64,000 bases of DNA from NCBI GenBank assembly GCA_964057225.1, contig OZ059896.1, positions 18,786,001 to 18,850,000 of the forward strand, in the 5' to 3' direction. Made by a program: the position numbers and the translations under genes. The notes under the pieces are model-generated. The model made no database searches. It was not told the DNA's origin and was given only the letters and a program-made list of their open reading frames with translations. How positions within the stretch are numbered: the first letter of the stretch is position 1; every line of letters starts with the position of its first letter. Of the stretch, positions 15,601-54,960 are shown in pieces. Source of the DNA: Auanema rhodensis (taxonomy: Eukaryota; Animalia; Nematoda).

Positions 15601-18197
15601 TGTCTAATTTGAATGCGATTTGCATGGCCTTGTGGCCTAATGGATAAGGCGTCGGACTTCGGATCCGAAGATTGTAGGTTCGAGTCCTGCCAGGGTCGTT
15701 ATTTTTTGTTTTAAAAAAAATCATTACCTGATAAATTACATGTTTTATTCTGTATTATCTCAAACAATTGAAAAAAATACTAACAGTAAAACAAATGCAG
15801 TGTTAATATTCTCGAGAATGTTCCTATTCAGAGTGAGAAAATATCGAAAATTTCCCGAAGGTTTTCTCATAAGGTACTAAAATAAAAGTATTATTTCATA
15901 TTATTATTTTTTCAGACCTAGAATCGATAAAAAAAATTAACTACATTTTAGTGAGTTACTGGGTTGGGTTATACAAATTGTCTAATTAGAATGCGATTTA
16001 CATGGCCTTGTGGTCTAATGGATAAGGCGTCGGACTTCGGATCCGAATGTTGTAGGTTCGAGTCCTGCCAGGGTTGTTATTTTTTGTTTCAAAAAAATCA
16101 TTACCTGATAGTTTACATGTTTTATGCTGTATTATCTCATACAATTGAAAAAAATACTAGCAGTAAAACAAATGCAGTGATGATATTCTCGAGAATGTTC
16201 CTATTCAGAGTGAGAAAATATCAAAAATTTCCCGACGGTTTTCTCATAAGGTACTAAAATAAAAGTATTATTTCATATTATTATTTTTTCAGACCTAGAA
16301 TCGATAAAAAAAATAAACTACATTTTAGTGAGTTACTGGGTTGGGTTATACAAATTGTCTAATTAGAATGCGATTTACATGGCCTTGTGGCCTAATGGAT
16401 AAGGCGTCGAACTTCGGATCCGAAGATTGTAGGTTCGAGTCCTGCCAGGGTCGTTATTTTTTGTTTCAAAACAATCATTACCTGATAGTTTACATGTTTT
16501 ATTCTATATTATCTCATACAATTGAAAAGAATACTAGCAGTAAAACAAATGCAGTGTTAATATTCTCGAAAATGTTCCTATTCAGAGTGAGAAAGTATCA
16601 AAAATTTCCCGAAGGTTTTCTCATAAGGTACTAAAAGAAAAGTATTATTTCATATTATTATTCTTTCAGACCTAGAATCGATAAAAAAAAATCAACTACA
16701 TTTTAGTGAGTTACTAGGTTGGGTTATACAAATTGTCTAATTTGAATGCGATTTAAATGGCCTTGTGGCCTAATGGATAAGGCGTCGGACTTCGGATCCG
16801 AAGATTGTAGGTTCGAGTCCTGCCAGGGTCGTTATTTTTTGTTTTAAAAAAATCATTACCTGATAGTTTACATGTTTTATTCTATATTATCTCATACAAT
16901 TGAAAAAAATACTAGCAGTAAAACAAATGCAGTGATAATATTCTCGAGAATGTTCCTATTCAGAGTGAGAAAATATCAAAAATTCTCCGAAGGTTTTCTC
17001 ATAAGGTACTAAAATAAAAGTATTATTTCATATTATTATTTTTTCAGACCTAGAATCGATGAAAAAATCAACTACATTTTAGTGAGTTACTGGGTTGGGT
17101 TATACAAATTGTCTAATTTGAATGCGATTTACATGGCCTTGTGGCCTAATGGATAAGGCGTCGGACTTCGGATCCGAAGATTGTAGGTTCGAGTCCTGCC
17201 AGGGTCGTTATTTTTTGTTTTAAAAAAATCATTACCTGATAGTTTACATGTTTTATTCTATATTATCTTAAACAATTGAAAAAAATACTAGCAGTAAAAC
17301 AAATGCAGTGATAATATTCTCGAGAATGTTCCTATTCAGAGTGAGAAAATATCAAAAATTCTCCGAAGCTTTTCTCATAAGGTACTAAAATAAAAGTATT
17401 ATTTCATATTATTATTTTTTCAGACCTAGAATCGATAAAAAAAATTAACTACATTTTAGTGAGTTACTGGGTTGGGTTATACAAATTGTCTAATTTGAAT
17501 GCGATTTACATGGCCTTGTGGCCTAATGGATAAGGCGTCGGACTTCGGATCCGAAGATTGTAGGTTCGAGTCCTGCCAGGGTCGTTATTTTTTGTTTTAA
17601 AAAAATCATTACCTGATAAATTACATGTTTTATTCTGTATTACCTCATACAATTGAAAAAAATACTAGCAGTAAAACAAATGCAGTGATAATATTCTCGA
17701 GAATGTTCCTATTCAGAGTGAGAAAATATCAAAAATTCTCCGAAGGTTTTCTCATAAGGTACTAAAATAAAAGTATTATTTCATATTATTATTTTTTCAG
17801 ACCTAGAATCGATGAAAAAATCAACTACATTTTAGTGAGTTACTGGGTTGGGTTATACAAATTGTCTAATTTGAATGCGATTTACATGGCCTTGTGGCCT
17901 AATGGATAAGGCGTCGGACTTCGGATCCGAAGATTGTAGGTTCGAGTCCTGCCAGGGTCGTTATTTTTTGTTTTAAAAAAATCATTACCTGATAAATTAC
18001 ATGTTTTATTCTGTATTATCTCAAACAATTGAAAAAAATACTAGCAGTAAAACAAATGCAGTGATAATATTCTCGAGAATGTTCCTATTCAGAGTGAGAA
18101 AATATCAAAAATTATCCGAAAGTTTTCTCATAAGGTACTAAAATAAAAGTATTATTTCATATTATTATTTTTTCAGACCTAGAATCGATGAAAAAAT

Positions 18198-18580
18198 TGT
18201 CACATCTGCAAGCACATGGTAAACATGTGCGCGCTATTCAAATAGCGGGAGCCTGAACAAGCCCCGCCTACAACATGGGACACACATGTCACTCTTGCTT
18301 CTGGCCTAACCCAGATAGGTTGTCTTATAGCCATGTGAGTCTCATCTCTATATCATCTATATATATATACTCTATTTAATACTTTGTTATATCTCTTTAT
18401 ATTCTTTCTTAATGTAATTCTTATATTGTATTTTCTTGTTATCTGATAATGAATCCTTTTCGCTTTAAGTATTTGTCTTAATAAGGAAATCGGGTCGTTC
18501 GGGTCTGCCTACCTAAGGAACAAGGTAGAAGTACATATATCTTCCGACCATGAAAAGACGGGAAGAAACAATATGTAACG
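18198..18580 (+). repeat. Element A 5' LTR (TG...CG)
   Basis: Direct repeat of 27963-28345; no differences seen by eye. Confidence 0.96.
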
Positions 18581-18593
18581 TGGAGGTTCCACC
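18581..18593 (+). promoter_or_regulatory. Primer-binding site, tRNA-Gln
   Basis: TGGAGGTTCCACC directly after the LTR; complement of the tRNA-Gln 3' end GGTGGAACCT-CCA. Confidence 0.9.
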
Positions 18594-19733
18594 TTGCTTA
18601 CTTTACTGTTAATTTATTGACAGCAAGTTTACGAGACTTTTGGACTTAATTACCCAACAGTGAGGAGTAACCGAGCCGTGCACCATGATTTCCCCAAAAA
18701 TTATTTTGGCTACCACTTCTCCTCCGCTCAACGAAAACTGGGAGGTGTCTGAGACGTTTGGGGAAACTATCAGACAATAGTTTTGACGAGCGTTACCTTT
18801 TTGTTATGCACGCGCGTGCTATTTTGATTCATTACTTTATGATGTGAATGTCCAGTGTGGCAACAGAGCTCACTTTTTAGCTGAGTTGTTTGGAAGCTGG
18901 AGGCTGTTGGGATAATTTTATTTACGATTTTTTGATTTTGATTCACATCCAAGGGTTCATCAGGGTTCCACTCCTGTTAACTCTTTTCTTATTAGTTCAG
19001 AGATAATAAGAATATTTAAATTCCTACCCACCCAAGTCCACTCTACGTCTGCCAACGTTTCCTTTTTCCTATATTATTGACAGATTACTGAATTTAAACT
19101 CCTATATCAATCTTAAATTACCTTCTAAATCTTTGGAAATTAAATTAAAAATTATCTTAATTAAGATTTATTTTGAAATTCTTTCTACAAATCTTAATAA
19201 ACTTTATAAAATTGAACTTAATATACGAGATGAGACATTTTTGTTTACTTTAAGCTTACTCACATTCAAATAGTTGGCCCACGCGTACCAGCTGTTCGAC
19301 ATGTGTAGTCAATAACAGCTGTTAAAATTCAAAAGTTTTCAAACAGGCTTAAGGCACCATCTGTGATTCCTTATTTGTCTCTAAGCTGACATTAGTGATT
19401 ATAATATTCAAATATCACGACAGACGGTCAATGGTTGTTTACCATAAGCGCTAACATCTGGTGTCGTGACACATGGCTGGAGGCGGAGCTTGAAGCTTCA
19501 ACGATCCTCCTTCATCAGACGCCATTGTCACAAACGTTTTTACTGGAGTCTAGTTGCTTCCAGTACGCGCTCTTATATTCATCTAACTGTATTCACCAGC
19601 CACCCTGTCGGACTCGGACATCAGCGAGGAAAACAAAGATCAGGAACAAGGATCACCAGAGGTACGCCAAGTTTTTGAATTTAATTCTAAAAACTTAAAT
19701 ACTCCATCCACCTACCTCTCTTCTTTTGAATTT

Positions 19734-22700
19734 TTGAGAGAAGAAGGTGATTCCTCTTCTTCTTCTCACTCTTCTTCTCTAACAATTAGAACGAGAAGTA
19801 AAAGCAGAAAGGCCATCACTGAGGAAACACCTCGGGCACCTACTACAGTACGAAATAGATCACCAAGTCGGTGGGCCGCTGCTATAACTAAAGCTTTTGA
19901 AAGAAAAATGACTCCTACCTCTCCATCTCCTAATTCTAATGTTGCTCCACCCTCTAGAAATATGGCAACTATTTTGAATTGCCATCTCTGTCCCAGGTAT
20001 GACGGCTCTCGTAGCTTTCGTTCTTTTGTTGAATCTTTAAATAGATTTTTTAATGTTATGAATCTAAGTTTACCTGAGAGACTATTAATTTTACCTCTTC
20101 TTTTGGAATCAAATGAAACAGCTCTCTCCTTGTATAATAGTATTCCTAGTGGCATAAGAACTAATGGCCCATGGATTGTTTTGATGGATCAGCTCACTGA
20201 GCTTTTAGCGCCTAAAACAGATAAAAATTTCACCATAGCGCTTATTCATCGAATACAACAAGGAGATAAATCTGTTCTCGATTTTAGTATGGAATTAGAG
20301 AGAATGGCAAGCACCATAATGTCACCAATGGATCCCGAGCGGGAACCAATGTTGAAAACGGCATTTTTAAATGGTTTAAAAGAGGAACTGGGTATTGCGG
20401 TTTTAACTAAAAACCCCGCCACTTATGAACAAGCTAAGAAATTAGCTAGGTTTGAAGAAGGCGTTCGGAATAGCTTCATGAAAAGAAATGAAGACACCAG
20501 CACCTTGAAGGAGCTCATAAATGCTTTACAACATAAATTAAGCTTTAGTGAAGAAAGAGAAAGAAGTAGGAATAATAATAATAATAAAAATTATAAAAAT
20601 AATAAAAATAATAAAAAAAATAATAACTGGACTCAGCACAATAATGGCTCTAATGATTATGAGCGAGAGAGAGAGCGACCTTCTGCCGTACGTTATAATA
20701 ATAATAATTCGCAGAACGGGAATATGAATAGGCGTCCTAACCCGGGAAACCGCCCATTTGCCAATGGCAGAAATGCCAATAGCTCGTCTTGGAACCCTAG
20801 GCCTAGTTCCCCAAGAAGACAAAGACCATCAGCCAATGGGAATGGTAACTCAAGGGTATACAGCGTAGCGACCCCATTCATGCCACCGGTCACGTTGTGC
20901 CTGACTTTATTGGCACTCTCATGCCTTCCCTTTGGGTCGGCAAAATATCAGATTTGCGCTCAATCTGAAGGGGGTATATTAGTAACACCTCCTGTGGTCA
21001 CAGGCTGCCATAAGGCAGAAATTGAAAAGGCTCACAGTGTTGAGGTAGAAATATATCTACCAAAGGCTGAGATAGAGTCATGGGAAGCATGGAAATGCTA
21101 TGTGAAAAAGTATAAAAGCTGTGTGAGAGATTTCATGTTTTTGAGAGATCGTAACACCACATTCTCTCATATTGAAACAGTAGATAAGAAAGATTGTGTT
21201 CGAGCACATAGAAATCGTATGTGGAATGATAAAATCATGAATGCCCAACAGCATTCAGTTTTTGAAACACCATTAAACGAGCATAATCCAACTCGCTCTT
21301 GGTCCACTGAAGAATGTGTAGAAATTGAACAATTTGTATTGAAGCGAGGGATAATAACTAGATTGAAAGAAGATCACATTGTATCAGACTTATTTATAAA
21401 TACTGATAATTGTAAAGGAAATGAAGGGTTTTGTGCAACTGGTGAAGGTGCAGTTATCTGGCAACCACCTATCCCATCAGTTGTCTGTCACTATCAAAAA
21501 CTTGGCCCCTTCTCCGCCATGTTGGGTGATCATATTCTTCTAGTTCACTCTATTGAAAGCGCTTTTGTTCTCCAAAATCATTCCACATCCGCTCACGTTC
21601 AATCTTGTTTCGAATTCGCTGTTTTTGAATCATCTTCTGAGGCAATTATCCGATTCACAGCATATCCCCGTGTTTATAATTTGCTTGATCTTTCCAATAC
21701 TTTGCTTAATGCTGATAGACGCAGAAATAAACGTAATGCATTACCTCAAAAACATCGCTCTTTCAGTGATGATTATCTTTTTGTTAATGCGAAATCCCAA
21801 TCATATGCGTTTCCATTTCTAAGACCTACTTTCATTTTTGGATCTGCATCTATCACTAAGTTTTACGCAAAATATATGAGATATGCAGCTACATCATCTT
21901 ATGAGAGTTTGCTCCAATTCGCGATAGATAATCCACTGTTCATTGACACAATTGTTAGTTTAGGATTGACAAAAGATCACATAACTAACTGGGCCAAGTC
22001 TAATAATTTCAAAGATCCCAATCTTTTGATTTTACAATGTATGGGTATAGAGGAAATTAAACTGGCTACTAGACAGGTGATTAATAGCATGAAATTGGAT
22101 GATCTTATCACTCAAGTAGCTCGTCGTATAGAAGTTCCTCGGTTAAAAAGATCTTTGATGAAATCTACAACATCCATAGAAGATTTCTTTCGAGGAATGG
22201 CTCACGCAGTAGTATATCAAGCCACAATTCTTGATGGTACACAAACAGTTCCATCAATCGAACAGTTGGCAAGAGCCTTATATCCATCTATATTACCACG
22301 CAGTGGAAATATGAATCAATCTGAAATTATTGCAACTGCTCAAGGCATGTTATTCATGATCCAACAACAATCGGGAAAAGAACAAATATCTCGTGACATG
22401 CAAGTCAGTCGACAACAAAAAGCTGATGCTACTGTTAGAAATAACCAAGAGCAAGATTTAGCAATTATATCCAAGCTGCCTGACTATCACAACCTTTATA
22501 CAAAGAATAGTACAGCATATTATGGATTTCCTCCACAGTCCATCGAATACCCACAGGAAAATCCTAAATTCAATAAAACAGAAGTTTTAGAATTCATAAG
22601 TTGGGTTAAAACTCAAATCACAACTGATAAAAATATGGTGGTACAGCATACTACTGTAACCCCAATAACTTCCACCAAAACTACAATTCGTAGTTTAACA

Positions 22701-25700
22701 ACTCCTACCCCTAATGCGTACGAGAGAGGTCGAGAGTTGTATGTAGCAGAAGTATATGACAATGTTCTCCACAAATCAGAGCATAAAACTAAAACGATAA
22801 TAGATAATAAGTTGAATTATGGGTTTGAGAAAGCGCGTCTCTCCATAATTGACGAATTTCATCAACAGTTTCATACCATCTGTAAATCTCAAATGGAAAC
22901 TGTAAAAAGCTGGCAAGCTATATTACGTATACATCCTACAATAGGAGTACGAGCTATGCTTCAGCGGGATGATATCGTTGCCCGATTTGTTGGAAGAAAT
23001 GTTTTAAAAATAACAACTTGTCAGGAAATAGAACCACATTTCATTTATCGTAATCATTCTTACAATGATAAATGTTATGCAGAGACCCCTGTTTTAACAC
23101 ACGATAAACAATTATTCTTTGCTCCTATCGATAGCTACGATTTGAGCACTGAAGGACATGAGATCAATTGTGAACACAAAGAGACAGAAATTTGGTATGA
23201 AAATGGAACATGGAAAGATTATAAAGGTGACACACATAAAGTAGATAGTATTCATTCAGAAAAACATGATCATTATGCTGAATTGAGTAAACTTCGATTC
23301 ACAGGGCGGAATTTGTTTGAAAATTCGACTGAAAAATCCTTAGCCCTATCTATTGGATTAACTTATGGTTATAGTTTATCTACTTCACCTCACCATGATC
23401 TTCTCCGCGTAATTTCTCGTTCACGTGATTGGCCTCAAATTTCCTCTTTCATCTTCAAAGGAAGTAAACTTATAAGAGATGCCAGGAAAATTGTTTTCTC
23501 CAATTGGGATCTGTTCATTGACTTTTGTATAGGTTCAATTGAACGAACACTCATTACCATCGGTTGTATAACTCTGATATTATGTCTAATGATAGCATTA
23601 TATTTCACTATAAAATGTTATCTCTCCCCTACTTCTATGTTAAAAATAAACCATATCATGTTGAGCCCAACAGCTCCACCTTTTGAGGGAGATGAGATTC
23701 ATGAAACAGTTAGTGATGAATTGATGCGGAGCTATTTTCCCACCATAATAACTTACATTCCTTTAGCCATACCTTTTGTATGTCACACAACAACAAAGAA
23801 AAATGGACACATGTTACCGTTTGTTCATATTGACATTGAAGGTAGAGGACTGTTAGCATTATGGGATTCTGGAGCTACGGTCTCATATATTCCGTTCTCC
23901 ACATTGGCATATATTGGAAGACAATATTTTACAAAATATTCTAAATCTGCATCCACTGCAAATGGATCAGAGTTTCGCTTTGTGGGAAAATGCAAGTTAG
24001 ATGTGGGTATAGCAGGTTACCAAGTGGAACACGAATTTTTAATATCTGAAGACAATGACTGTCCAGGACAAATGTTACTTGGTACTGATTTTATGCGTAC
24101 GTTGGAAGAAAGAGAGATATTTACTACATTAAAACTATGTAAAGGAAAGTTGATTGTTGGTAATATGGAAACACCCTTAGTAAAACCTGGTTGTTTTGCA
24201 TATAAAACCACAACTAAAACAGTAAATATCATAAGTTTGTCCACAGTAACAGTTCCACCACATAGTACCTCCCACATATCTTTGCAAACAGGACCAGAAT
24301 TAGATTTTGATCAATATGCTCTTTTAAAATCTAGCACAGGTCCTATATCAATTCCAGATGCCGCCATAGGACCTTTTCCTATTACTATGGTAGTATCAAA
24401 CAATTCTTCAAAGCCAATTAAAATTAATAAAAATGACCACATTGGTTCAGGACTTATAGCATCTAAAGAAATTATGAACGATTATGTTCCACCTGAAGCT
24501 GATTGGGAAGATAAGTTACCAACTTTTCCTCAGCATCTTTTGGATGATTTGAACTTCAATTCTTGCACTCTGTCTCATAAAATGAAGAAAAATCTGATCA
24601 CAATCATTAAGGAAAACCAAACGGCATTTTTCAACCATGATCATAATATTGGTCTCTTTTGCGGACCAGTTGAACATGCCATTCCTATGAGATCTGATAT
24701 GGATTTTCCAAAAAGTAGATCTTACAGAGTACCATTGGGTAAGCAAGAAGAAGTAGAACGGCAAGTGAAAGAAATGTTGTCGCAAGGTATAATCGAAAAT
24801 TCGACGGCTACTTTCACTAGTCCGGTTGTTCTTGTGAAAAAGAAAGATAATTCTTTCCGGTTCGTTACTGACTTTAGAGCATTGAATAGTGTTACTAAGA
24901 AACAAACATACAGCATCCCACACATTCCTGATATCATAGACTTAGCGGCTGGAGCTCAGTTCTTTTCGAATTTTGATCTCATTTCTGGTTTCTTCCAAAT
25001 ACCGTTGAAACGCTCAGATAGATACTTAACTGCTTTTACCACTCCATCAGGTACCTATCAGTATTGCCGAATGCCTATGGGATTGTGTGGAGCGCCACAC
25101 ACTTTTCAATCCGCAGTACGATACTTGCAATCTCTTGTTAGATGCAAACTGTTTGTATATCTAGATGATTTGCTAATAATTTCGAACTCAGCTGAAGAAC
25201 ATTTAAGAGATATACAAGAAGTGCTGAAAAAGGTCACTGAACTAGGGTTAAAAATTAAGTTATCTAAATGTTGCTTTGCAGCCACTGAAGTAAAGTTTTT
25301 GGGTTTTATAATAGGTAGAAATGGTGTTAAACCAGATCCTGCTAAAATACAGGCTGTTTCCGAATTTCCAAATCCAAGCACAGTTACGGCTGTCAGATCC
25401 TTTCTAGGTATGACTAACTATTTTCGACGGTTTATTCAAAATTATGCCGGAATAGCTGAGCCATTGTATAAGTTAACACATAAGGATACTCCTTTTGAGT
25501 GGAAATCGGAACATGCAGACGCATTTGAAACTTTAAAAACATTACTGTGTACTGCCCCTGTACTGAAACCTCCTAAAGCAGACCAACCTTTTGTTATAGA
25601 AAGTGATGGCAGTATGATCGCTGTGGGAGCAGTTTTATTGCAATCAGCAGAGAAAAATTCTCCATTACACCCGATTGCGTTCGCTAGTAGAAAGTTGACT

Positions 25701-27950: not shown

Positions 27951-27962
27951 AAGGTGGGGGGA
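27951..27962 (+). promoter_or_regulatory. Polypurine tract of element A
   Basis: AAGGTGGGGGGA immediately before the 3' LTR. Confidence 0.9.
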
Positions 27963-43009: not shown

Positions 43010-44109
43010 TACCTTATGAGAAAACCTTCGGAGAATTTTTGAAAAAAAAAAACCTTCGGAGAATTTTTGATATTTTCTCACTCTGAATAGGAACATTCTC
43101 GAGAATATTATCACTGCATTTGTTTTACTGCTAGTATTTTTTTCAATTGTATGAGATAATACAGAATAAAACATGTAATTTATCAGGTAATGATTTTTTT
43201 TAAACAAAAAATAACGACCCTGGCAGGACTCGAACCTACAATCTTCGGATCCGAAGTCCGACGCCTTATCCATTAGGCCACAAGGCCATGTAAATCGCAT
43301 TCAAATTAGACAATTTGTATAACCCAACCCAGTAACTCACTAAAATGTAGTTGATTTTTTCATCGATTCTAGGTCTGAAAAAATAATAATATGAAATAAT
43401 ACTTTTATTTTAGTACCTTATGAGAAAACCTTCGGGAAATTTTTGATATTTTCTCACTCTGAATAGGAACATTCTCGAGAATATTATCACTGCATTTGTT
43501 TTACTGCTAGTATTTTTTTCAATTGTATGAGATAATACAGAATAAAACATGTAATTTATCAGGTAATGATTTTTTTTAAACAAAAAATAACGACCCTGGC
43601 AGGACTCGAACCTACAATCTTCGGATCCGAAGTCCGACGCCTTATCCATTAGGCCACAAGGCCATGTAAATCGCATTCAAATTAGACAATTTGTATAACC
43701 CAACCCAGTAACTCACTAAAATGTAGTTGATTTTTTCATCGATTCTAGGTCTGAAAAAATAATAATATGAAATAATACTTTTATTTTAGTACCTTATGAG
43801 AAAACCTTCGGGAAATTTTTGATATTTTCTCACTCTGAATAGGAACATTCTCGAGAATATTATCACTGCATTTGTTTTACTGCTAGTATTTTTTTCAATT
43901 GTTTGAGATAATACAGAATAAAACATGTAATTTATCAGGTAATGATTTTTTTAAAACAAAAAATAACGACCCTGGCAGGACTCGAACCTACAATCTTCGG
44001 ATCCGAAGTCCGACGCCTTATCCATTAGGCCACAAGGCCATGTAAATCGCATTCAAATTAGACAATTTGTATAACCCAACCCAGTAACTCACTAAAATGT
44101 AGTTGATAT
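43010..44109 (-). repeat. Inverted tRNA-Arg array segment (genes 43215-43287, 43591-43663, 43967-44039)
   Basis: Reverse complement of the array unit. Confidence 0.96.
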
Positions 44110-44136
44110 TGTCGCGATAAGCGAGTAGGTTTTGTT

Positions 44137-44161
44137 TTTGTTATCTCTATCTCTCTCTATA

Positions 44162-44196
<35 letters not shown>

Positions 44197-44200
44197 TTAT
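44137..44200 (+). repeat. (CT)n/(CTAT) microsatellite within the element D LTR
   Basis: TCTCTCTC run; 8 bp longer in the 3' LTR copy. Confidence 0.9.
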
Positions 44201-44443
44201 CTCCTTCCTTTGTAACTAGATCAAAACACATATGCATGACATATGTGTTAACATGTGGCATAAGTAACAGTTTATTTCAGACGACCGCCCAACAACGGAG
44301 GACAGTCTTACATTTTCAACGTTCGCAGTCAGTGATTTTATTCCGTGCTTGTCTTGTTAATTCATCAATAAACCCTTTTCTACATATTTGCTTTGTGTTT
44401 TACTTCCAACCATACTATACACTTGTGGTATAACGCCACAAAT

Positions 44444-44455
44444 TGGTGCATCGGC
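44444..44455 (+). promoter_or_regulatory. Primer-binding site, tRNA-Gly
   Basis: TGGTGCATCGGC 3 nt after the LTR; complement of the tRNA-Gly(GCC) 3' end GCCGATGCA-CCA. Confidence 0.85.
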
Positions 44456-44728
44456 TAGTTTAGATCTTAGCCGCTTTAAGTCCCACGTGGCAGGTGAGAT
44501 ACAACTCGAACCAAGCGTGTTTGAGCAAAAAACATACTTAATAAAAATCGTGGCGATCATAAGTCCACGTCAAGTCACACCAAACAGACTTGAACAATAA
44601 GCAAACTCTGAAATTAGAAACAGAGGTTTCAATTTCCTTACGTTCACATATACTGTGATCACCAAACAAACAAAGAAAAAAGAAAACAAAAAAGGAATAT
44701 AAGCATTATTCCTACATCTACAACAAAA

Positions 44729-47700: not shown

Positions 47701-50700
47701 ACTATTCACAGAAATAAACATGCATGTTCGCGAATTCTTGTCAAACGACGAACAAGTAATACAGAACCTTCCTGAAGAAGACAGATATCCGAACATGACA
47801 ACCAAAATACTTGGCATATCTTTTAATAAAGAACACGACTCCTTCATTATCCCAATAAAAATAACAACGACTCACACAAGTTACACCAAGAGAATTCTAC
47901 TCAGTCAGCTACACTCAATATTTGATCCCATTGGATTAGCAGCACCATTACTGTTACCTCTCAAACTTATCTTGCGAGAAATCATAAACACAAAATTATC
48001 ATGGGACCAACCCATTGAATCAGATAATATCAAACAATGGGAACAACATATTAATCACATTAACAATCAGCAATTGACCATGAAAAGATATTTTAAATTC
48101 TCTGAACATACAACACAGTTATGGGTCTTTGCTGACGCAAACAACCAAGCCATGGCCGCATGTTCATATTTCCAAACAAACGAGCAGATTAGTTCTCTGC
48201 TCAACGGTAAATCCCGCATAGCACCCAAAAATAAGACCACAATTCCTCGATTAGAATTATTAGCCATCCGCTTAGCAGTACGAATGGCATTAGCTATTGT
48301 AACCATATGCCCGAAAGTGGCAAAAGTCAACATTATAAGCGATAGCAACATCGCGCTATCATGGATTATTTCTCTAAAATCCCTCCCACTGTTCATTAAA
48401 AATCAAACAAACATTATAAATAAACAGCTACACCAAATCAAACAAGTATGTTGCAATGTAGAATTACATCATGTACAAACCTCGTACAATACTGCAGACA
48501 TTGGATCCCGAGGTGCAGACATCGAGAAACTACAAGATTCCGACTGGATAAAGGGTCCACATTGGTTAACTAAACTTTCCGCTCATAACCCTCTGACATC
48601 ATTCGGCTCGCCTAAGAACTCTAACAGGAATAACGCAGAATCAGAATCGGAGCATCACAATGTGGTCCACATAATTATAGACAATCTTCCAACCGATGAT
48701 ATTTGGAACATTCGTGAAAACTATGATGATGTGATCAAAACAATGACAACCGTAGGAAAATTATTCAAAAAATGGTTTCTTAAAGTCCATCCTAACAACG
48801 CCAACAAGTTGCAAAAAATAAAACATCTCACATCAACAGACACGCACACTGTTGAAGACATCAACATTATTGAAAAAATTTTGATCAGTAACAGTCAATC
48901 TAATATGAGCCTTGATGACTTACAGCAAAGACATATAAATCTAAAATTCTTCAAAGATACATGGGATATTTATCGCGTAAGAAGCCGTTTACAAAATACT
49001 CTTCTTCCCGAAGAGACGAAAAACCCTATATTCCTTCTTAAAACAAACCCCATAGTTAAAAAACTGATCAACAAAATACACAAAGACAATAATCATCAAG
49101 GCAAACATTTCACGCTTATTCAATTGAGACAAAAATTCTACATACCAAAAATAACCGGAGTCATCAGACAAACATTGAAAAACTGTGTGACATGTAAAAG
49201 ATTCCAATCACACCCTTATGAATTACCAGATATGCCATCGCTACCAAAAGATAGAGCGATTCTTACAAGAGCATTCTTTTCAACAGGGTGTGATCTTATG
49301 GGCCCCTTCACCCTTCGAAATGGGTCTAAAGTCCATATTTGTCTGTTTACATGCATGACAACTAGAGCAATTCACTTAGAGGTAGTCACCAATCAATCCA
49401 CAGTTGCCTTTATGAATGCATTTAATAGATTTATATCACGCAGAGGTACTCCAGAAATTATGCGCAGTGACTGCGCAGGAAACTTTATTCTGAGCTCAAA
49501 AATATTAGAAACCCTTGAAAAAACCTCGGATTACAACGAAAGAAGCTTACTAAACACACTAGCACAGCAAAAAATTAAATGGATATACAACACTCCATTA
49601 TCACCCTGGAAAGGTGGATGTTGGGAACGTTTAGTAGGTGTAACCAAAGCTTCACTCAAAAAATGTTTCATTCCTAGTCGAATGTCCCTGGATGACTTAC
49701 ACACAGCCATTGTAAAAATAGAAGCTATAATTAATACACGCCCACTCACCCATCCACACCCAGATAATTTAGATACTCTACCCATAAGGCCAATTGACTT
49801 TTTAACATCAGCCATAAAGTTTTCATTACCTGAAAACAACGCGGATACTCATATATTTGATATCCAGAGCGATATTCAAACGATTCAATCAACAGAGCAA
49901 GCGCTAGAAGCGCTTCAATTATCAGAAGACTCAGCATCTAAATTTTGGAAACGATTTCAAGAAGAATATCTAACAAGCTTAAAAGATATATTTAAGCATA
50001 AACACCATAGAAAAAATCACACAAACATCTTCCCCCAACCAGATGAAATAGTATTGATACAAAACGACATGTTGCCACGAGGAACATGGAAACTAGGTCG
50101 CATCATTGAAACAATCACTAGTTCAGATGGCAACATACGTTCAGCAAAAGTCGCAACAAGCAATGGAAACATAATTATTCGATCCATTAATCAGCTCTAT
50201 CCACTAGAGATAAGATGCAACACTAACAGTAACAAAATCATAGAAGACAACTCACACATAGTTCAAGAAAATAATAGCTCAACAGATAGAACCCCACATA
50301 CTGATATTGTATTAGACAATATACTTTTCGATCATCCTATAGAACATACAGATCAAACAATACATGAGAATAATAACATAAATGATGTTAGCCATAATTA
50401 CGATATTGCATATGAATCAGATAACTCGCAACATGATAATACATACACTCCAGAAACAGAGAACAATGAGGATGCCACAAATGATCGACCTCAAAATAAG
50501 ACAAAACAATCAGCAGTAAAAACAGCAAAATATACAGAACAAGATGATGTCACTGAGAAGGAAATTATAAAAGCCTTCCCACTAAAAATGTCCTATGCTA
50601 CACACCAAAGAAAAAATAAAATAAACCCAAAAGTAGCAGCTGACATTATGAAAGCGCTTTCCTTACCGATTATGATAACTTCGACATATGCCGAAGAAAT

Positions 50701-52660
50701 CAATAGTTGCAAGGACTCTAACATGTTCACCACAAAACTTATAGCGAATCCTCATTGCTCCCCAGAAATGGCAACATGGACAGTGATAATAACCATTATG
50801 GCCGTTACCCTCATAGTCTCTTGTCTATGCCGCATGGGTTACAGCCAATATAGATATAAGACATGGTCCAGAAACACTCAAATTATGCTCAACACCATGA
50901 AATCAAAACACAAAACAATCTCCGTACAAGAAGATCATGAAACTGATCAAAAAATAACAGAAAATCACAATGATACGTTGCAATTAAAACAAACGAACAC
51001 ACAAGACGTTAATATTGTGGATCATGAAACCTCTCAAAAGCATATTTACCCTATTTTAAACCATACAAGAAGGCCACCAAAATTCTCTCTTTTTACTAGA
51101 GGGTCGCAATCATCTTTACCATCGTTACTGGCAATCATCTTGGCTTTCTGTATTGGAAGCTGCAGCTCTTGCTCCGATGTCCATGTTCAACATTTCGTTA
51201 AGATAAGATGCGATGAAAACCTAGTCTGTTATCACGAATACAGTCAAGATATAATATTCTCTCCCGGAACAAAACAGTTATGTATCAACATAATACACTC
51301 TAATCATGAAATCGGTCAATTCAAAATAACGAAATTATATACTGAACATGTCTGCCGAAAGAATATTAGATACTTCACTAGACAGACAACAGTTAACATA
51401 CTGAGTATATTACGATGCCGTCACCGAGGCTCCTGTAACGGAACATGTGAAACTAACTCGCTTCATAACAAAATCAAAGAACTACAACCATACACCTTTC
51501 CTTCACAATCCGGTTGTTTTACATCGTCGGCGAGATTTTACACATGTCCTATGATTTGGACAGATCCATGTCTTTTCTACAAAATAGAGCATATACCCAT
51601 CACAGAAGAAGTATACGAAGTCTATACTTGTGATAGTTGGTTCACCCAAACTGTATTCAATATAGAAACAACACTACTCCAGCAGAAAAACAATTACAAT
51701 ATCACTCTACAACCTTACACAAAAAATCGTGAACAACTTTTCAATATAACAACGTTATCACAATCACAACCTCCTCCAGAAATGTACACAAAATTATTTT
51801 TTTCCTCGAAAGAAAACACGTACATTACGGATATACATACAAAGGGAATAGTTCAATGTGCAACAGAGGAAGCCGCATTCAAACATTTCAACAATTGTAC
51901 AGTATCCTCATTTTGCCCATGCACATTTAACAGATTTGATGAAATAAAATGTAGGTGTGATACCCCTACTTTTGAAAAAATGTCCAATACATCAGACATG
52001 AGATCTCCTAACCACAACTTCAAAACTAAAGATAACACGTTATCATTCTCTACAAATTTAGACGAAAGTTTTGTTACGGTCGATTCATCTCTATTCTTAA
52101 ACTCAGTCATTTTTTCCAACAATCTGCCTTGTGCACCTGCCCTCACAAAACTATCAGGTTGCTACTCCTGCGGGCAGGGTGCGTTCGCAGAGTTCCAATG
52201 CCTTACGGCAGAAGAAACATGGATTTCTATCGAATGTCAAAGAGAAGTATTCATGATAAAATGTTCTCCAAAAGTAGCAATCACGGAAATAACAATCAAA
52301 AGAGAAAATTCTCAAATTGATGAATTCTGCTATACCACATGCGACAATAAAAAAATTAAGATCATTATTAAGGGAACATTACACCACATAGCAAGCATAG
52401 ATGAAATAAACGAAAGTGACTCAAAAGAGGGTACAAAATCCAAATCCATTGACTTTGCTCCAATCTTCAAACTAATCCTATCAAAGTTGGGAATCATACT
52501 GATAGGCATTGTCATTACCGCTACTATAGGATATGTTGCATGCACGCCAATGATATACTTTGTATTGTTAAATACAGTATTAGCCATACAATGGATGGCC
52601 AAAAGGACGATTGCAATATACAGAAATTTCACAGCCTCACTTCGAGATCAGAGATTTTAA
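44729..52660 (+). CDS. BEL/Pao Gag-Pol-Env polyprotein
   Basis: Gag LPTFDG..F..FW..F, triple Cys/His knuckle, protease LIDEGS, RT LYVDN, FADA and TIPRLEL motifs, integrase WKGGCWERLVG, Gc-like Cys-rich domain from 51170 (GCYSCGQGA) and C-terminal TM. Confidence 0.96.
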   Translation: MSLLFVNHIKQSNQFLGELLTRYEMEVKDLPVILVDCDFHTEEEEETLSCLIIRWTKVQHQFKESLKNHQDNEKKFQKFYEASDKTLRKALDEQYIAFTSGEDFEPNIKKVQNAIIELDEHIMKAERILRKLRKTLHKNESEHNSNCSTENNETENKSNDQFLEIIKSFLHIQQTSIQKPAMSLPTFDGKPENFKSFWGRFDRLVHDNEQFTTLEKVNLLCESLKGNSQIAIRGIEPSAQNYELMREALVSEFGDYSSDINSLLTQLRNLRFASNNAKACKETFGETKALIRQIEAAGATVSREMCTAMILNKFPYHIMEDILIHPNNYHSTKEMLAAVDHKIYSFILKEQTRNSHEQKFRNHKDNVTSVSHKDSTAEQRKTQTWPCVFCDSSEHRFYQCTTFETPEKRRYRIRGKAICWICFSDKHKSSECRKQKCRNCQGDHNSALCSQGRKSVQNIQKDKETPTIKKDQALLITTEELLNKKTTEYKQESDTNNRIPTEALNAPVSLNHIADTHNIEESQVILRTAMANIYNHNSKKYEQVRMLIDEGSMRSFISKDLSTKLGLPILGSQKKTFYGIGALSETHEVQDVKVIIGTSSGSLIVTKLFTKPMLTTPIRCPKLSKEDLKFIKTRKIKLANPQTNGESFTPDILIGMDRYKLFMHLNEETELPSRMSLKNSVFGHMIHGEAPLPHDNTQQEVILCSTVEEITKETSHKELLTNLFELDSIGINTENANADRTIDYYEEYSKDIKIENNRIIAPFPLKNNFKNLKNNKMPAYHRFVSLWRKLLHNPEMLSHYTTTIESYLKDNIVEQIPNNHQEPLEFYMPHHGVWKPSKANPLRIVFDASAKQKDSPSLNEIIHTGRSFITYIHDIMISCRTRPILITCDIKAAFLQIQLTENHKNLCKFFWIKNKEYPISHNNIITLRFNRLPFGITASPSVLNMGIKWFLESKVDNPLAMEILNNLYVDNIILTANTTAETIKKCKETQKLFTEINMHVREFLSNDEQVIQNLPEEDRYPNMTTKILGISFNKEHDSFIIPIKITTTHTSYTKRILLSQLHSIFDPIGLAAPLLLPLKLILREIINTKLSWDQPIESDNIKQWEQHINHINNQQLTMKRYFKFSEHTTQLWVFADANNQAMAACSYFQTNEQISSLLNGKSRIAPKNKTTIPRLELLAIRLAVRMALAIVTICPKVAKVNIISDSNIALSWIISLKSLPLFIKNQTNIINKQLHQIKQVCCNVELHHVQTSYNTADIGSRGADIEKLQDSDWIKGPHWLTKLSAHNPLTSFGSPKNSNRNNAESESEHHNVVHIIIDNLPTDDIWNIRENYDDVIKTMTTVGKLFKKWFLKVHPNNANKLQKIKHLTSTDTHTVEDINIIEKILISNSQSNMSLDDLQQRHINLKFFKDTWDIYRVRSRLQNTLLPEETKNPIFLLKTNPIVKKLINKIHKDNNHQGKHFTLIQLRQKFYIPKITGVIRQTLKNCVTCKRFQSHPYELPDMPSLPKDRAILTRAFFSTGCDLMGPFTLRNGSKVHICLFTCMTTRAIHLEVVTNQSTVAFMNAFNRFISRRGTPEIMRSDCAGNFILSSKILETLEKTSDYNERSLLNTLAQQKIKWIYNTPLSPWKGGCWERLVGVTKASLKKCFIPSRMSLDDLHTAIVKIEAIINTRPLTHPHPDNLDTLPIRPIDFLTSAIKFSLPENNADTHIFDIQSDIQTIQSTEQALEALQLSEDSASKFWKRFQEEYLTSLKDIFKHKHHRKNHTNIFPQPDEIVLIQNDMLPRGTWKLGRIIETITSSDGNIRSAKVATSNGNIIIRSINQLYPLEIRCNTNSNKIIEDNSHIVQENNSSTDRTPHTDIVLDNILFDHPIEHTDQTIHENNNINDVSHNYDIAYESDNSQHDNTYTPETENNEDATNDRPQNKTKQSAVKTAKYTEQDDVTEKEIIKAFPLKMSYATHQRKNKINPKVAADIMKALSLPIMITSTYAEEINSCKDSNMFTTKLIANPHCSPEMATWTVIITIMAVTLIVSCLCRMGYSQYRYKTWSRNTQIMLNTMKSKHKTISVQEDHETDQKITENHNDTLQLKQTNTQDVNIVDHETSQKHIYPILNHTRRPPKFSLFTRGSQSSLPSLLAIILAFCIGSCSSCSDVHVQHFVKIRCDENLVCYHEYSQDIIFSPGTKQLCINIIHSNHEIGQFKITKLYTEHVCRKNIRYFTRQTTVNILSILRCRHRGSCNGTCETNSLHNKIKELQPYTFPSQSGCFTSSARFYTCPMIWTDPCLFYKIEHIPITEEVYEVYTCDSWFTQTVFNIETTLLQQKNNYNITLQPYTKNREQLFNITTLSQSQPPPEMYTKLFFSSKENTYITDIHTKGIVQCATEEAAFKHFNNCTVSSFCPCTFNRFDEIKCRCDTPTFEKMSNTSDMRSPNHNFKTKDNTLSFSTNLDESFVTVDSSLFLNSVIFSNNLPCAPALTKLSGCYSCGQGAFAEFQCLTAEETWISIECQREVFMIKCSPKVAITEITIKRENSQIDEFCYTTCDNKKIKIIIKGTLHHIASIDEINESDSKEGTKSKSIDFAPIFKLILSKLGIILIGIVITATIGYVACTPMIYFVLLNTVLAIQWMAKRTIAIYRNFTASLRDQRF

Positions 52661-52934
52661 TAAAGAAGATATAAAAGGTAGAATAAACAAAAGCAAAGTA
52701 TAAACTAAAATTCACATAAATAAAATAAACCAAGGAGAAAAGAGAAGGGATTAATTTCTGAAATAATAAAGTAACACGAATCTGCTAGTTTTACTTAAGA
52801 TATCTAATCTGTAGTATTGAATTACATAATAACTCGTTAACAGACGTTTAATGGATAATATCAAAAACAGAAGGATACCATATTAATCCCTGAATGACGC
52901 AATATATCCATATCCAAGAACAGACGCCAACCAG

Positions 52935-52971
52935 TATATAAGGTGGCTAAACAAGTTTGCCTCAACTCAGT
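52935..52971 (+). promoter_or_regulatory. Putative internal promoter (TATATAA plus TCAGT initiator-like motif) for the accessory ORF
   Basis: TATATAA at 52935, TCAGT at 52967, ATG at 52975. The CTCAG could instead be a splice acceptor. Confidence 0.45.
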
Positions 52972-52974
52972 ACA

Positions 52975-53436
52975 ATGGAAGATATGACATCCAACTTGAT
53001 TGAGAACACTTCCTTCGAAGAAGATCTCAAAAAGTTTTCACATCTTCCCAATACTACTGCGAACCTGAGACAGCTAATGGTCCTGGAGAAAAGGTTCTAC
53101 GACAACCTCGCCAGTGCTGTGAACCACCTCTCTGAGAGACTGGACAACATTGCTCAATCTCTAAATTTGAAACTAGACAGCCTAGCTGTTCAGACCGCGC
53201 CAAAGGCCTCCTGCATCTTTTGCAGCAAGCCAACCGCAGATGGCCACCGCACTGCAGCTTGTCCCATATATCCATCTTCTCCAGAGCGCACTTTACGTCT
53301 ACATGAATTGGGACTATGTATCAGATGCTTGAACCCGAAACATCCGGACACATGCGAGGTATCTTGTTATAGATGCAAGGCAGAGACCCACCATGGAGTT
53401 GTATGTGGGGAGACCAAACGTAAAAGACCCATGTAG
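52975..53436 (+). CDS. Accessory Cys/His-rich (triple zinc-knuckle-like) protein of element D
   Basis: Helical N-terminus, CIFC..H....C, CIRC....H...C, CYRC....HH...C and C-terminal KRKRP; ends 22 bp before the 3' LTR. Confidence 0.8.
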   Translation: MEDMTSNLIENTSFEEDLKKFSHLPNTTANLRQLMVLEKRFYDNLASAVNHLSERLDNIAQSLNLKLDSLAVQTAPKASCIFCSKPTADGHRTAACPIYPSSPERTLRLHELGLCIRCLNPKHPDTCEVSCYRCKAETHHGVVCGETKRKRPM

Positions 53437-53508
53437 GTCTTTACACTCTTGCCGCGAGTGTCGCGATAAGCGAGTAGGTTTTGTTTTTGTTATCTCTATC
53501 TCTCTCTA

Positions 53509-53553
<45 letters not shown>

Positions 53554-53797
53554 TTATCTCCTTCCTTTGTAACTAGATCAAAACACATATGCATAACATA
53601 TGTGTTAACATGTGGCATAAGTAACAGTTTATTTCAGACGACCGCCCAACAACGGAGGACAGTCTTACATTTTCAACGTTCGCAGTCAGTGATTTTATTC
53701 CGTGCTTGTCTTGTTAATTCATCAATAAACCCTTTTCTACATATTTGCTTTGTGTTTTACTTCCAACCATACTATACACTTGTGGTATAACGCCACA

Positions 53798-54547
53798 GAT
53801 TTTTTCATCGATTCTAGGTCTGAAAAAATAATAATATGAAATAATACTTTTATTTTAGTACCTTATGAGAAAACTTTCGGAGAATTTTTGATATTTTCTC
53901 ACTCTGAATAGGAACATTCTCGAGAATATTATCACTGCATTTGTTTTACTGCTAGTATTTTTTTCAATTGTATGAGATAATACAGAATAAAACATGTAAT
54001 TTATCAGGTAATGATTTTTTAAAACAAAAAATAACGACCCTGGCAGGACTCGAACCTACAATCTTCGGATCCGAAGTCCGACGCCTTATCCATTAGGCCA
54101 CAAGGCCAAGTAAATCGCATTCAAATTAGACAATTTGTATAACCCAACCCAGTAACTCACTAAAATGTAGTTAATTTTTTTTATCGATTCTAGGTCTGAA
54201 AAAATAATAATATGAAATAATACTTTTATTTTAGTACCTTATGAGAAAACCTTCTTGAAATTTTAGATATTTTCTCACTCTGAATAGGAACATTCTCGAG
54301 AATATTAACACTACATTTGTTTTACTGCTAGTATTTTTTTCAATTGTTTGAGATAATACAGAATAACACATGTAAACTATCAGGTAATGATTTTTTTAAA
54401 ACAAAAAATAACGACCCTGGCAGGACTCGAACCTACAATCTTCGGATCCGAAGTCCGACGCCTTATCCATTAGGCCACAAGGCCATGTAAATCGCATTCA
54501 AATTAGACAATTTGTATAACCCAACCCAGTAACTCACTAAAATGTAG
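53798..54547 (-). repeat. Inverted tRNA-Arg array segment (genes 54035-54107, 54412-54484)
   Basis: Reverse complement of the array unit. Confidence 0.96.
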
Positions 54548-54960
54548 TGTTCCATACGTGTCCTATAAGTAGAGCGATTGACAACGTCAATCGCTTATAA
54601 AACGGAACATTATAAAAACAAATAGCTGACGCTACATTTGAGAAACAGGAATTCAATGCAACAATGAACGAACACTTTTTCATATTAAGTTTAATTAAAG
54701 AAAGCCCAATTCAAGCGGAACCAAGTTCCGCGGACCTGATATAACCACTTTTTATGCTCGTAAGGAATACTATATAAGGTTTCCTTACGAGTCCTTTGGG
54801 CTGCGACTAGGAATCATTATGTAACTTTTATTATTGTAATTTGTATACTTTATCATAAATAAACCTTTCTCTCTATACTCTTTATCATTTATATTTGGAA
54901 GAAAAGAAAATAATTCCATGTGGTTACCCAGCCGGAACCCTGGGGAACCACCATGGAACG
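54548..54960 (+). repeat. Element E putative 5' LTR (TG...CG)
   Basis: Terminal inverted repeat TGTTCCAT/ATGGAACG; TATA at 54771; AATAAA at 54858. Confidence 0.8.

What the first reader, a model, noticed from the sequence alone, without database searches (positions are those of the whole stretch)
18194..54548. Four independent LTR insertions all land 27-70 bp upstream of a tRNA gene: candidate Pol III-targeted integration in an animal
Seen: relative to the tRNA 5' end, the TSD of A is at -70..-67, B at -30..-27 and D (BEL/Pao) at -70..-66, and the junction of E is at about -63. That is a ~44-bp window in a 377-bp unit, and A and D, from different superfamilies, hit almost the same bases. A rough chance estimate is 4*(44/377)^3, about 0.006, which is post hoc with n=4. 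Selection against hits elsewhere should be weak with ~79 redundant copies. Known: yeast Ty1/Ty3 and Dictyostelium TRE5/DGLT-A target tRNA 5' flanks through TFIIIB/Pol III. Inference: these families may be tethered to, or exploit chromatin next to, the TFIIIB footprint, using the array as a safe harbour. I do not know of this being described for nematode gypsy or BEL elements.
Basis: partly seen in the sequence, partly recalled or inferred. Interest (0 to 1): 0.88.

Follow-up and report, generated by a model that had tools for sequence, protein, structure and literature searches.

The report
LTR insertions cluster upstream of tRNAs
In a nematode tandem array of 79 tRNA-Arg genes, four separate young retrovirus-like (LTR) insertions from three families all sit 27-70 bases upstream of a tRNA gene, which hints at yeast-style tRNA-gene targeting in an animal but rests on four events in one array.

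Summary
The window is a 376-378-bp tandem array of tRNA-Arg(TCG), with 79 copies. It is interrupted by A (gypsy, 10.1 kb, TSD AAAT at -70..-67), B (a 2.7-kb coding-deficient derivative of A, TSD CAAA at -30..-27) and D (BEL/Pao with a phlebovirus-like env, imperfect 5-bp TSD at -70..-66). A fourth junction lies at -63.

One correction: that fourth junction is not the edge of the ORF-bearing LTR pair. It is the 5' LTR plus primer-binding site of another gypsy-like element, F, which runs off the window.

Under a uniform null, the clustering has p about 0.005 (n=4) or 0.03 without F. AT content and the target tetramers do not explain it.

The decisive test, other copies of these families, could not be run because the source genome is not in any reachable collection. 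Four distant relatives have no tRNA within 10 kb.

Verdict: a real, probably non-random integration hot spot in the tRNA 5' flank. Integrase tethering to Pol III factors is untested. I found no animal precedent in the literature I could search.

The parts
1..18197 (+). tRNA-Arg(TCG) tandem array, 48 units of 376-378 bp, no interruptions
   Evidence: Rfam tRNA 66.4 bits
18194..18197 (.). Left copy of A's target-site duplication AAAT (right copy 28346-28349), -70..-67 from the tRNA +1 at 28416
18198..28345 (+). Element A, a full-length Ty3/gypsy element. LTRs 18198-18580 and 27963-28345 are identical, with termini TGTCAC..GTAACG. PBS at 18581-18593. One 2536-aa ORF at 19734-27344 carries PR-RT-RH-IN. 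Same orientation as the tRNA.
28346..37047 (+). tRNA array, 23 units
37048..39737 (+). Element B, a non-autonomous internal-deletion derivative of the A family (97-98% identical to A). LTRs 37048-37428 and 39357-39737 are identical. TSD CAAA at 37044-37047 and 39738-39741, which is -30..-27 and lies inside TATACAAA at -34..-27.
39738..40786 (+). tRNA array, 3 units; ends at unit position 266 (about -111)
40787..43002 (+). Fragment C, an LTR-less piece of a third gypsy family. It spans PR to RNase H, equivalent to A residues 1373-2072 at 56% aa identity. It sits at the point where the array reverses orientation. It is not a clean integration and is not counted.
43003..44109 (-). tRNA array in inverted orientation, 3 units, with a 33-bp local duplication at its start (43010-43042)
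44110..53797 (+). Element D, a full-length BEL/Pao element. LTRs 44110-44440 and 53459-53797 are TG..CA and differ by 1 substitution plus an 8-bp indel. One 2643-aa ORF at 44729-52660 carries DUF1759 gag, Peptidase_A17, IN, DUF5641 and a Phlebovirus G2-like env. TSD GATAT/GATTT at 44105-44109 and 53798-53802, which is -70..-66 from the tRNA +1 at 44039. Orientation is divergent from the tRNA.
53798..54547 (-). tRNA array in inverted orientation, 2 units; the last base is -63 from the tRNA +1 at 54484
54548..54973 (+). Element F, 5' end. The putative 5' LTR is 54548-54960 (TGTTCC..GGAACG) and contains TATA-like and AATAAA motifs. The PBS TGGAGGTTCCACC at 54961-54973 is identical to that of A and B. 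Apart from its 3' terminus, the LTR is unrelated to A's LTR. The leader continues at 54974-55597 and 63230-64000 and runs off the window.
55602..63225 (-). Element E, a full-length gypsy-type element nested in F's leader. LTRs of 379 bp are identical. Perfect TSD CTCC at 55598-55601 and 63226-63229. PBS TGGGGGCCGAACCGG. The pol reading frame is split across ORFs. E did not insert in the array.

Best explanation
The 5' flank of each tRNA gene in this array, roughly -70 to -27 from the mature 5' end, is a preferred integration site for several active LTR retroelement families of this clade V (rhabditid-like) nematode.

Shown: four independent, very recent integrations fall in a 44-bp stretch of a 377-bp unit. 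They come from three families in two superfamilies: the gypsy A family (A plus its coding-deficient derivative B), the gypsy-like F, and the BEL/Pao element D. A and D cut at the same phosphodiester steps.

Inferred: the preference is set from the target side by the Pol III pre-initiation complex and the chromatin it organises. B sits inside a TATA-like TATACAAA at -34..-27, where TBP/TFIIIB would bend the DNA. A, D and F sit at -70..-60, where the upstream edge of TFIIIB and an A6-A9 tract would meet the first upstream nucleosome. Two unrelated integrases with no shared accessory domain hit the same base steps. A shared accessible or distorted target, or convergent tethering as in yeast and Dictyostelium, therefore fits better than a single inherited targeting module.

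The array of redundant genes would then act as a low-cost landing zone.
For: - TSDs and LTR, PBS and PPT anatomy show that these are genuine, separate integrations.
- Phase clustering has p=0.005 (n=4), 0.03 (n=3) and 0.008 with a spacer-only null.
- The spacer is uniformly AT-rich, and the target tetramers are spread over the whole unit.
- Five other A/T tracts of at least 5 bp in the unit are not hit.
- LTR pairs are identical in A, B and E and nearly so in D, so the elements inserted recently. Five LTR elements or fragments (A, B, C, D, F) interrupt the array within about 36 kb (18-54.5 kb), with a sixth (E) nested in F.
- The tRNA is a strong Rfam match with a canonical B box and a T-run terminator, and 54 of 79 copies are identical. 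The copies next to A, D and F have the consensus sequence.
- The positions overlap known Pol III-targeting windows. TFIIIB occupies about -15 to -32 from the TSS in the Ty3 structure.
Against: - There are only four events, in one array, and the pattern was noticed post hoc.
- F has one visible junction, so its terminus is inferred.
- Every position in an array is within 304 bp upstream of some tRNA, so only the phase carries information.
- No copy of these families outside the window could be examined.
- Four distant relatives have no tRNA within 10 kb.
- E, a further young element, inserted into F about 1.1 kb from the nearest tRNA and not at the hot spot.
- No integrase feature points to a Pol III tether.
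- Pol III occupancy of the array is unknown, and 25 of 79 tRNA copies carry substitutions.
Confidence: 0.5

Rival explanations
1. Chance clustering in a TE-accumulating region. The array is neutral, gene-poor repeat DNA where insertions are tolerated, and four of them happen to share a phase.
For: - n is 4 and p is only about 0.005-0.03 before allowing for the many patterns a scan can notice.
- E nested in F, and the rearranged fragment C, are typical of TE islands.
- The first 18 kb of the array carries no insertion.
- Distant relatives are not near tRNAs.
Against: - The A/D coincidence at the same base steps and the overall 40-bp span are each unlikely.
- All elements are very young, which argues against slow accumulation.
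- The cluster falls in the region where known Pol III-targeting elements insert.
Confidence: 0.3
2. Intrinsic DNA sequence or shape preference that does not depend on Pol III. The integrases favour bendable or distorted steps, such as the edge of the A6-A9 tract at -73..-68 and the TATACAAA at -34..-27, and would use the same sites on naked DNA.
For: - A and D, which have unrelated integrases, use the same steps at the 3' edge of an A tract.
- B lies in a TA-rich flexible motif.
- Retroviral-type integrases are known to favour distorted DNA (established knowledge).
Against: - The unit contains five other A/T tracts of at least 5 bp and many copies of the same tetramers, all unused.
- The four target sequences share no motif.
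Confidence: 0.15
3. Post-insertion filtering. Integration is uniform, but insertions at other phases are removed, either by selection (for example against aberrant Pol III read-through transcripts) or by array homogenisation.
For: Arrays do turn over by unequal exchange. Units are 96-100% identical, with blocks of shared variants.
Against: - With about 79 redundant copies, 25 of them already mutated, selection on any one unit should be weak.
- Homogenisation does not depend on phase.
- Identical LTRs leave little time for filtering.
Confidence: 0.05

Closest known systems
[quoted passage not shown]
   Same: An LTR element of the gypsy superfamily with a single gag-pol ORF. [quoted passage not shown] B at -30..-27 falls in that window, and both orientations are seen here.
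   Different: The host is an amoebozoan with a compact genome. Its targeting is documented genome-wide. A, D and F sit further upstream at -60..-70. No homology beyond the common pol was shown.
TRE5-A and NLTR-B (non-LTR elements, dictyostelids)
   Same: Their insertion windows are 40-54 and 39-64 bp upstream of the tRNA coding sequence, attributed to TFIIIB contact. These are close to the -60..-70 sites here. They are also an example of unrelated elements converging on the same flank.
   Different: They are non-LTR elements that use target-primed reverse transcription, not an integrase. TRE5 has a fixed orientation.
Ty3 (Ty3/gypsy, S. cerevisiae)
   Same: A gypsy-superfamily integrase that targets Pol III genes through TFIIIB (TBP/Brf1), with insertion upstream so that the gene survives.
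   Different: Ty3 inserts 1-4 bp from the TSS with base-pair precision, using an integrase CTD plus a vestigial chromodomain. Here the sites span -27..-70, and no chromodomain is detectable in A by Pfam.
Ty1 (Ty1/copia, S. cerevisiae)
   Same: It integrates upstream of Pol III genes into nucleosomal DNA and gives several discrete hot spots rather than one site. A family using both -70 and -30 is reminiscent of that.
   Different: Ty1 belongs to the copia superfamily, uses a window of about 1 kb, and tethers through the Pol III subunit AC40. None of that was tested here.
Nematode Cer-type gypsy and BEL/Pao endogenous retroviruses (Cer1-like; Cer13- or Atlas-like with a phlebovirus-type env)
   Same: The nearest protein relatives of A are from Heterorhabditis, Auanema and Caenorhabditis (41-64% identity). 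Those of D are from strongylids (38-39%). Domain sets are the same, including the G2-type env in D and a weak gB-like segment in A.
   Different: I found no tRNA association reported for these families. The four relatives' loci examined have no tRNA within 10 kb.

Membership tests
Pol III-gene-targeting retrotransposons (functional class: Ty1-4, Tj1, DGLT-A, TRE5/TRE3) | Insertions concentrated in a narrow window at a fixed distance from tRNA coding sequences | tested here: met
   All 4 clean junctions lie at -70..-27, spanning 40 bp of a 377-bp unit, p=0.005. This holds only within one array and n=4.
Pol III-gene-targeting retrotransposons (functional class) | The same association genome-wide, at dispersed tRNA genes of different isoacceptors and at other Pol III genes (5S, U6) | not testable with these tools
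   The source genome is absent from the protein collection (best identity 41-64%). LTR and array k-mers are absent from the viral, metagenome and prokaryote contig sets.
Pol III-gene-targeting retrotransposons (functional class) | Dependence on, or physical contact with, TFIIIB, TFIIIC or Pol III subunits | not testable with these tools
   This needs ChIP, interaction assays or in vitro integration on assembled complexes.
Pol III-gene-targeting retrotransposons (functional class) | The trait is shared by related elements in related hosts | tested here: not met
   L001 (C. auriculariae), L002 (C. nigoni), L003 (C. brenneri) and L004 (O. dentatum) have 0 tRNA genes within +-10 kb. These relatives are only 38-64% identical, so this is a weak test.
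Ty3-type targeting specifically | Integration within a few bp of the Pol III TSS, and an integrase CTD followed by a (vestigial) chromodomain | tested here: not met
   The sites are -27..-70 from the mature 5' end. Pfam finds no chromodomain in A and only a faint SH3_Tf2-1 hit, and the polyprotein ends about 40 aa after it. No structure prediction was run.
Ty3/gypsy LTR retrotransposon (element A) | LTRs with a TSD, PBS and PPT; pol order PR-RT-RNaseH-IN | tested here: met
   LTRs of 383 bp are identical, the TSD is 4 bp, the PBS follows the 5' LTR directly and a purine-rich tract precedes the 3' LTR. Asp protease lies at residue 1365, RVT_1 at 1701, RNase H at 1923 and IN at 2173-2342.
BEL/Pao LTR retrotransposon (element D) | Peptidase_A17 (Pao protease), DUF1759 gag, DUF5641 after the integrase; TG..CA LTRs; 4-6 bp TSD | tested here: met
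   Pfam E-values are 9e-39, 4e-15 and 9e-17. The LTRs are TG..CA, and the 5-bp TSD matches at 4 of 5 positions.
Functional tRNA gene (target) | Cloverleaf with internal A and B boxes and a downstream T-run terminator | tested here: met
   Rfam RF00005 scores 66.4 bits against a gathering score of 29. The B box GGTTCGAGTCC and a T6 run at +77..+82 are present. Expression was not tested, and 25 of 79 copies carry substitutions.

The most novel reading that the evidence does not exclude
At least three LTR retroelement families of a nematode, including a BEL/Pao endogenous retrovirus, have converged on Pol III-complex-directed integration into tRNA 5' flanks. This would be the first case in Metazoa and the first for the BEL/Pao superfamily, and a large tRNA array would serve as their landing pad.
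Probability: 0.35. Interest if true: 0.85.

Novelty: new variant of a known kind. Interest (0 to 1): 0.62.

Why it matters
Targeting of Pol III genes is the textbook example of retrotransposons choosing harmless landing sites. In the reviews I read, every listed case is in fungi or dictyostelid amoebae (PMC5911963 Table 1, PMC5006619). If nematode gypsy and BEL/Pao elements do the same, the strategy is not confined to compact unicellular genomes. It would also have evolved again in animals and in a superfamily for which it is unknown. These elements encode intact-looking polyproteins, have identical LTRs and sit in a defined 377-bp target, which would make integrase-host factor targeting tractable to study in an animal. 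It would also offer one explanation for how a large tRNA array and its parasites coexist.

Tried and rejected
1. Other copies of the A, D and F families. Three protein searches gave only relatives of 38-64% identity. Exact LTR and array k-mers gave zero hits in viral, metagenome and prokaryote contig collections, and a protein-guided scan of viral contigs found nothing.
2. Relatives' loci. Four were fetched and none has a tRNA within 10 kb. Two look-ups found no record. This test is weak because the relatives are distant.
3. AT-richness as the explanation. Rejected: the spacer is 65-90% AT throughout.
4. Simple tetramer preference. Rejected: AAAT and CAAA occur across the whole unit.
5. A shared captured targeting domain in the A and D integrases. 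Rejected: no similarity beyond a marginal integrase-core alignment and no extra Pfam domain.
6. A link between element primer-binding sites and the array's own tRNA. Rejected: the PBS expected for this tRNA (TGGCGACCC...) matches none of the elements.
7. E as the fourth array insertion. Rejected: E has its own TSD and is nested inside F.
8. F as a diverged A copy. Rejected: apart from the last ~12 nt of the LTR and the adjoining 13-nt PBS, the aligned stretch is 49% identical against 43% for shuffled controls.
9. Other Pol III genes near E or inside the elements. None was found.
10. C as a fifth data point. Set aside: it has no LTRs or TSD and lies at a fold-back breakpoint.
11. I did not run structure prediction of the integrase C-termini, because no outcome would decide the question.


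Full report
WHAT IS THERE. The window is dominated by a head-to-tail array of a 376-378-bp unit that carries one tRNA-Arg(TCG) gene. ARAGORN finds 79 copies, and TRF gives a period of 376/377 bp at 96-99% identity. Rfam scores the gene at 66.4 bits against a gathering score of 29, as a 73-nt tRNA whose first base is the ARAGORN start plus 1. I use that G as +1. The gene has a canonical B box and is followed by a T6 run. Of the 79 copies, 54 are identical and 25 carry 1-5 substitutions. The 303-bp spacer is 65-90% AT along its whole length.

A BLAST of the unit against the window splits the array into five blocks. Three are on the + strand (1-18197, 28346-37047, 39738-40786). Two are on the - strand (43003-44109, 53798-54547).

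THE INTERRUPTIONS.
- A (18198-28345, + strand) is a complete Ty3/gypsy element. Its LTRs are 383 bp and identical, with termini TGTCAC..GTAACG. The primer-binding site TGGAGGTTCCACC follows the 5' LTR directly, and a purine tract precedes the 3' LTR. A single 2536-aa ORF carries protease, RT, RNase H and integrase.
- B (37048-39737, + strand) has identical 381-bp LTRs. It is 97-98% identical to A over the leader and the 3' end but lacks almost all coding sequence, so it is a non-autonomous member of the A family.
- C (40787-43002) is an LTR-less piece of a different gypsy family. It covers protease to RNase H and is 56% identical to A residues 1373-2072.
- D (44110-53797, + strand) is a complete BEL/Pao element. 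It has TG..CA LTRs that differ by one substitution and one 8-bp indel. Its 2643-aa ORF includes DUF1759, Peptidase_A17, integrase, DUF5641 and a Phlebovirus-G2-type envelope domain.
- After the last array block comes a 413-bp sequence (54548-54960) that begins TGTTCC and ends GGAACG. It contains TATA-like and AATAAA motifs and is followed at once by the same 13-nt PBS as in A and B. That 13-mer occurs exactly three times in the window. I call this element F.
- F's LTR is otherwise unrelated to A's. The aligned LTR-plus-PBS stretch is 49% identical against 43% for shuffled controls, and the matches sit in the last ~12 nt and the PBS. F is therefore a third family, and it runs off the window.
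- Inside F's leader lies E (55602-63225, - strand), a complete gypsy-type element with identical 379-bp LTRs and a perfect TSD, CTCC.

CHECK OF THE OBSERVATION.
- A has the perfect TSD AAAT at -70..-67.
- B has the perfect TSD CAAA at -30..-27.
- D has GATAT/GATTT at -70..-66 relative to the inverted tRNA at 44039. No intact unit carries the variant base, so one TSD copy has changed or the duplication is imperfect.
- The last array base before F is -63.
- In tRNA-sense orientation, A duplicated AAAT and D duplicated AAATC, so the two unrelated elements cut at the same steps.

Three corrections are needed. First, the junction at 54548 belongs to F, not to the ORF-bearing LTR pair E. F shows only one junction, so its terminus and TSD are inferred. 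Second, A and B are one family, so three families are involved. Third, C is a fifth element in the array with junctions at about -111 and -127. It has no LTRs and sits exactly where the array reverses orientation, so its edges are rearrangement breakpoints, not integration sites.

IS IT MORE THAN CHANCE? The smallest arc of the 377-bp unit that covers the four sites is 40 bp. Under uniform insertion this gives p=0.0048 by simulation and by the analytic formula. It is 0.034 if F is dropped and 0.008 if insertions are confined to the spacer. The chance that all four fall within 100 bp upstream of +1 is 0.005.

Base composition cannot produce this. Nor can the duplicated tetramers. AAAT occurs 15 times and CAAA 7 times per unit when both strands are counted, and 80-86% of those sites are outside -75..-25. 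The A/D site abuts an A tract at -73..-68 whose length varies between units (A6, A8 or A9). Five other A/T tracts of at least 5 bp in the unit are unused. The signal is real but modest: n is 4, in one array, noticed after the fact.

AGE AND DENSITY. The LTR pairs of A, B and E are identical, and D's differ by one substitution plus one indel. Five LTR elements or fragments (A, B, C, D, F) interrupt the array within about 36 kb (18-54.5 kb), with a sixth (E) nested in F. Two very recent members of one family lie 9 kb apart. That is easier to explain by insertion bias than by slow accumulation. Copy numbers elsewhere in the genome are unknown, so the enrichment cannot be quantified.

MECHANISM. 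The shown facts are the positions, the independence of the events and their youth. The rest is inference.

B's duplication lies inside TATACAAA at -34..-27. In yeast, TFIIIB occupies roughly -15 to -32 from the TSS, and TBP bends DNA sharply there (established knowledge). A, D and F lie 30-40 bp further upstream, where the upstream edge of TFIIIB would meet the first nucleosome.

The A and D integrases share nothing beyond a marginal core alignment. A's C-terminus shows only a faint SH3-type hit and no chromodomain. Two unrelated integrases using identical steps is most simply explained by a property of the target, namely a distorted or exposed site created by the Pol III complex and phased chromatin. 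It could also reflect convergent tethering, as documented for Ty1/Ty3 and for TRE5-A/DGLT-A.

Orientation is not fixed. In A and B the 3' LTR faces the tRNA, whereas in D and F the 5' LTR does. DGLT-A likewise inserts in either orientation.

I put 0.5 on a tRNA-phase-specific hot spot linked to the Pol III gene, and about half of that on direct integrase tethering.

RIVALS.
- Chance in a TE-tolerant repeat region (0.3). Nesting and rearrangement are typical of TE islands, the left 18 kb of the array is clean, and distant relatives are not near tRNAs.
- Intrinsic DNA shape preference independent of Pol III (0.15). The A-tract edge and the TA-rich box are bendable, but similar sites elsewhere in the unit are unused.
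- Post-insertion filtering (0.05). It is unlikely given about 79 redundant and partly decayed copies and identical LTRs.

OUTSIDE EVIDENCE.
- The source genome could not be reached. The best protein relatives of A come from Caenorhabditis species (about 41% identity to the full polyprotein), Heterorhabditis (51% across RT-IN), and Auanema and C. brenneri (64% over part of that region).
- D's best relatives are strongylids at 38-39%. This places the host among clade V nematodes but gives no same-family copies.
- Exact 22-24-mers from A's LTR and from the array are absent from the viral, metagenome and prokaryote contig sets, and a protein-guided viral scan found nothing.
- Loci of four relatives contain no tRNA within 10 kb: C. 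auriculariae L001 (LTRs at 7940-8148 and 17717-17925), C. nigoni L002, C. brenneri L003 and O. dentatum L004. If the trait is real, it is not a general property of these clades. At 38-64% identity this test is weak.

COMPARISON WITH WHAT IS KNOWN. The review table of Pol III-targeting retrotransposons lists only fungal and dictyostelid elements. Their windows run from 1-4 bp (Ty3) through 13-33 bp (DGLT-A), 40-54 bp (TRE5) and 39-64 bp (NLTR-B) to about 1 kb (Ty1) (PMC5911963). The comparative survey PMC5006619 mentions no animal. Four further full-text searches found no report of tRNA-associated LTR elements in nematodes or other metazoans.

The sites here behave most like DGLT-A (B) and TRE5/NLTR-B (A, D, F). 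They do not meet Ty3's defining features. Membership of the functional class cannot be claimed, because the genome-wide association and the factor dependence are untested.

VERDICT. A non-random hot spot in the tRNA 5' flank is likely, while Pol III tethering remains a hypothesis. If true, it would be a new variant of a known strategy: its first occurrence in animals and in BEL/Pao elements.

One in vivo step is referred.

Noticed in passing
window 1-54547: The tRNA-Arg(TCG) array is itself unusual for an animal. It has at least 79 copies on a 377-bp unit. Of these, 54 are identical and 25 carry 1-5 substitutions, some in stems and often shared by non-adjacent units, which suggests block duplication or conversion. 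The array runs off the left edge of the window.
   Followed up: partly
window 40787-43081: The array reverses orientation at fragment C. The left arm ends at unit position 266 and the inverted right arm at position 250, so both arms point away from C in a fold-back arrangement. A 33-bp local duplication (43010-43042, repeated from 43049) lies at the right junction. The cause (inversion, fold-back repair or an assembly effect) is not resolved.
   Followed up: partly
window 22806-23081 (A polyprotein residues 1025-1116): There is a weak Herpesvirus glycoprotein B ectodomain hit (E=5e-4, below the Pfam cut-off) inside A's single ORF, upstream of the protease. Caenorhabditis relatives (P0001, P0002) carry precomputed Glycoprotein_B and Monjiviricetes_fusion hits in the same kind of polyprotein. 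A fusion-glycoprotein-like segment between gag and pol is an odd position for an env.
   Followed up: no
window 18581-18593, 37429-37441, 54961-54973: The same 13-nt primer-binding site, TGGAGGTTCCACC, preceded by an LTR ending in AACG, is used by A, B and the otherwise unrelated F. It is not complementary to the array's own tRNA. The priming tRNA was not identified.
   Followed up: partly
window 55598-63229: E is a complete gypsy-type element with identical 379-bp LTRs and a perfect TSD, CTCC, nested in F's leader about 1.1 kb from the nearest tRNA. Its coding region is split into three ORFs, with the break inside RT between 59582 and 59661. The last ORF, of 394 aa (56126-57310, - strand), has no Pfam match.
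   Followed up: partly
window 38507-38556: At its deletion joint, B carries a 45-bp patch that matches A 23765-23809 (96% identical). This suggests template switching during reverse transcription rather than a simple deletion.
   Followed up: no
window, unit positions -73..-68 in every unit: The A tract next to the A/D insertion site varies in length among units (A6 in 30 units, A8 in 32, A9 in 14), together with a linked G/A change just upstream.
   Followed up: partly
window 44729-52660: D encodes gag, protease, RT, integrase and a Phlebovirus-G2-type envelope in one uninterrupted 2643-aa frame. Its nearest relatives are 38-39% identical and come from strongylid parasites (Oesophagostomum, Haemonchus, Nippostrongylus).
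   Followed up: partly
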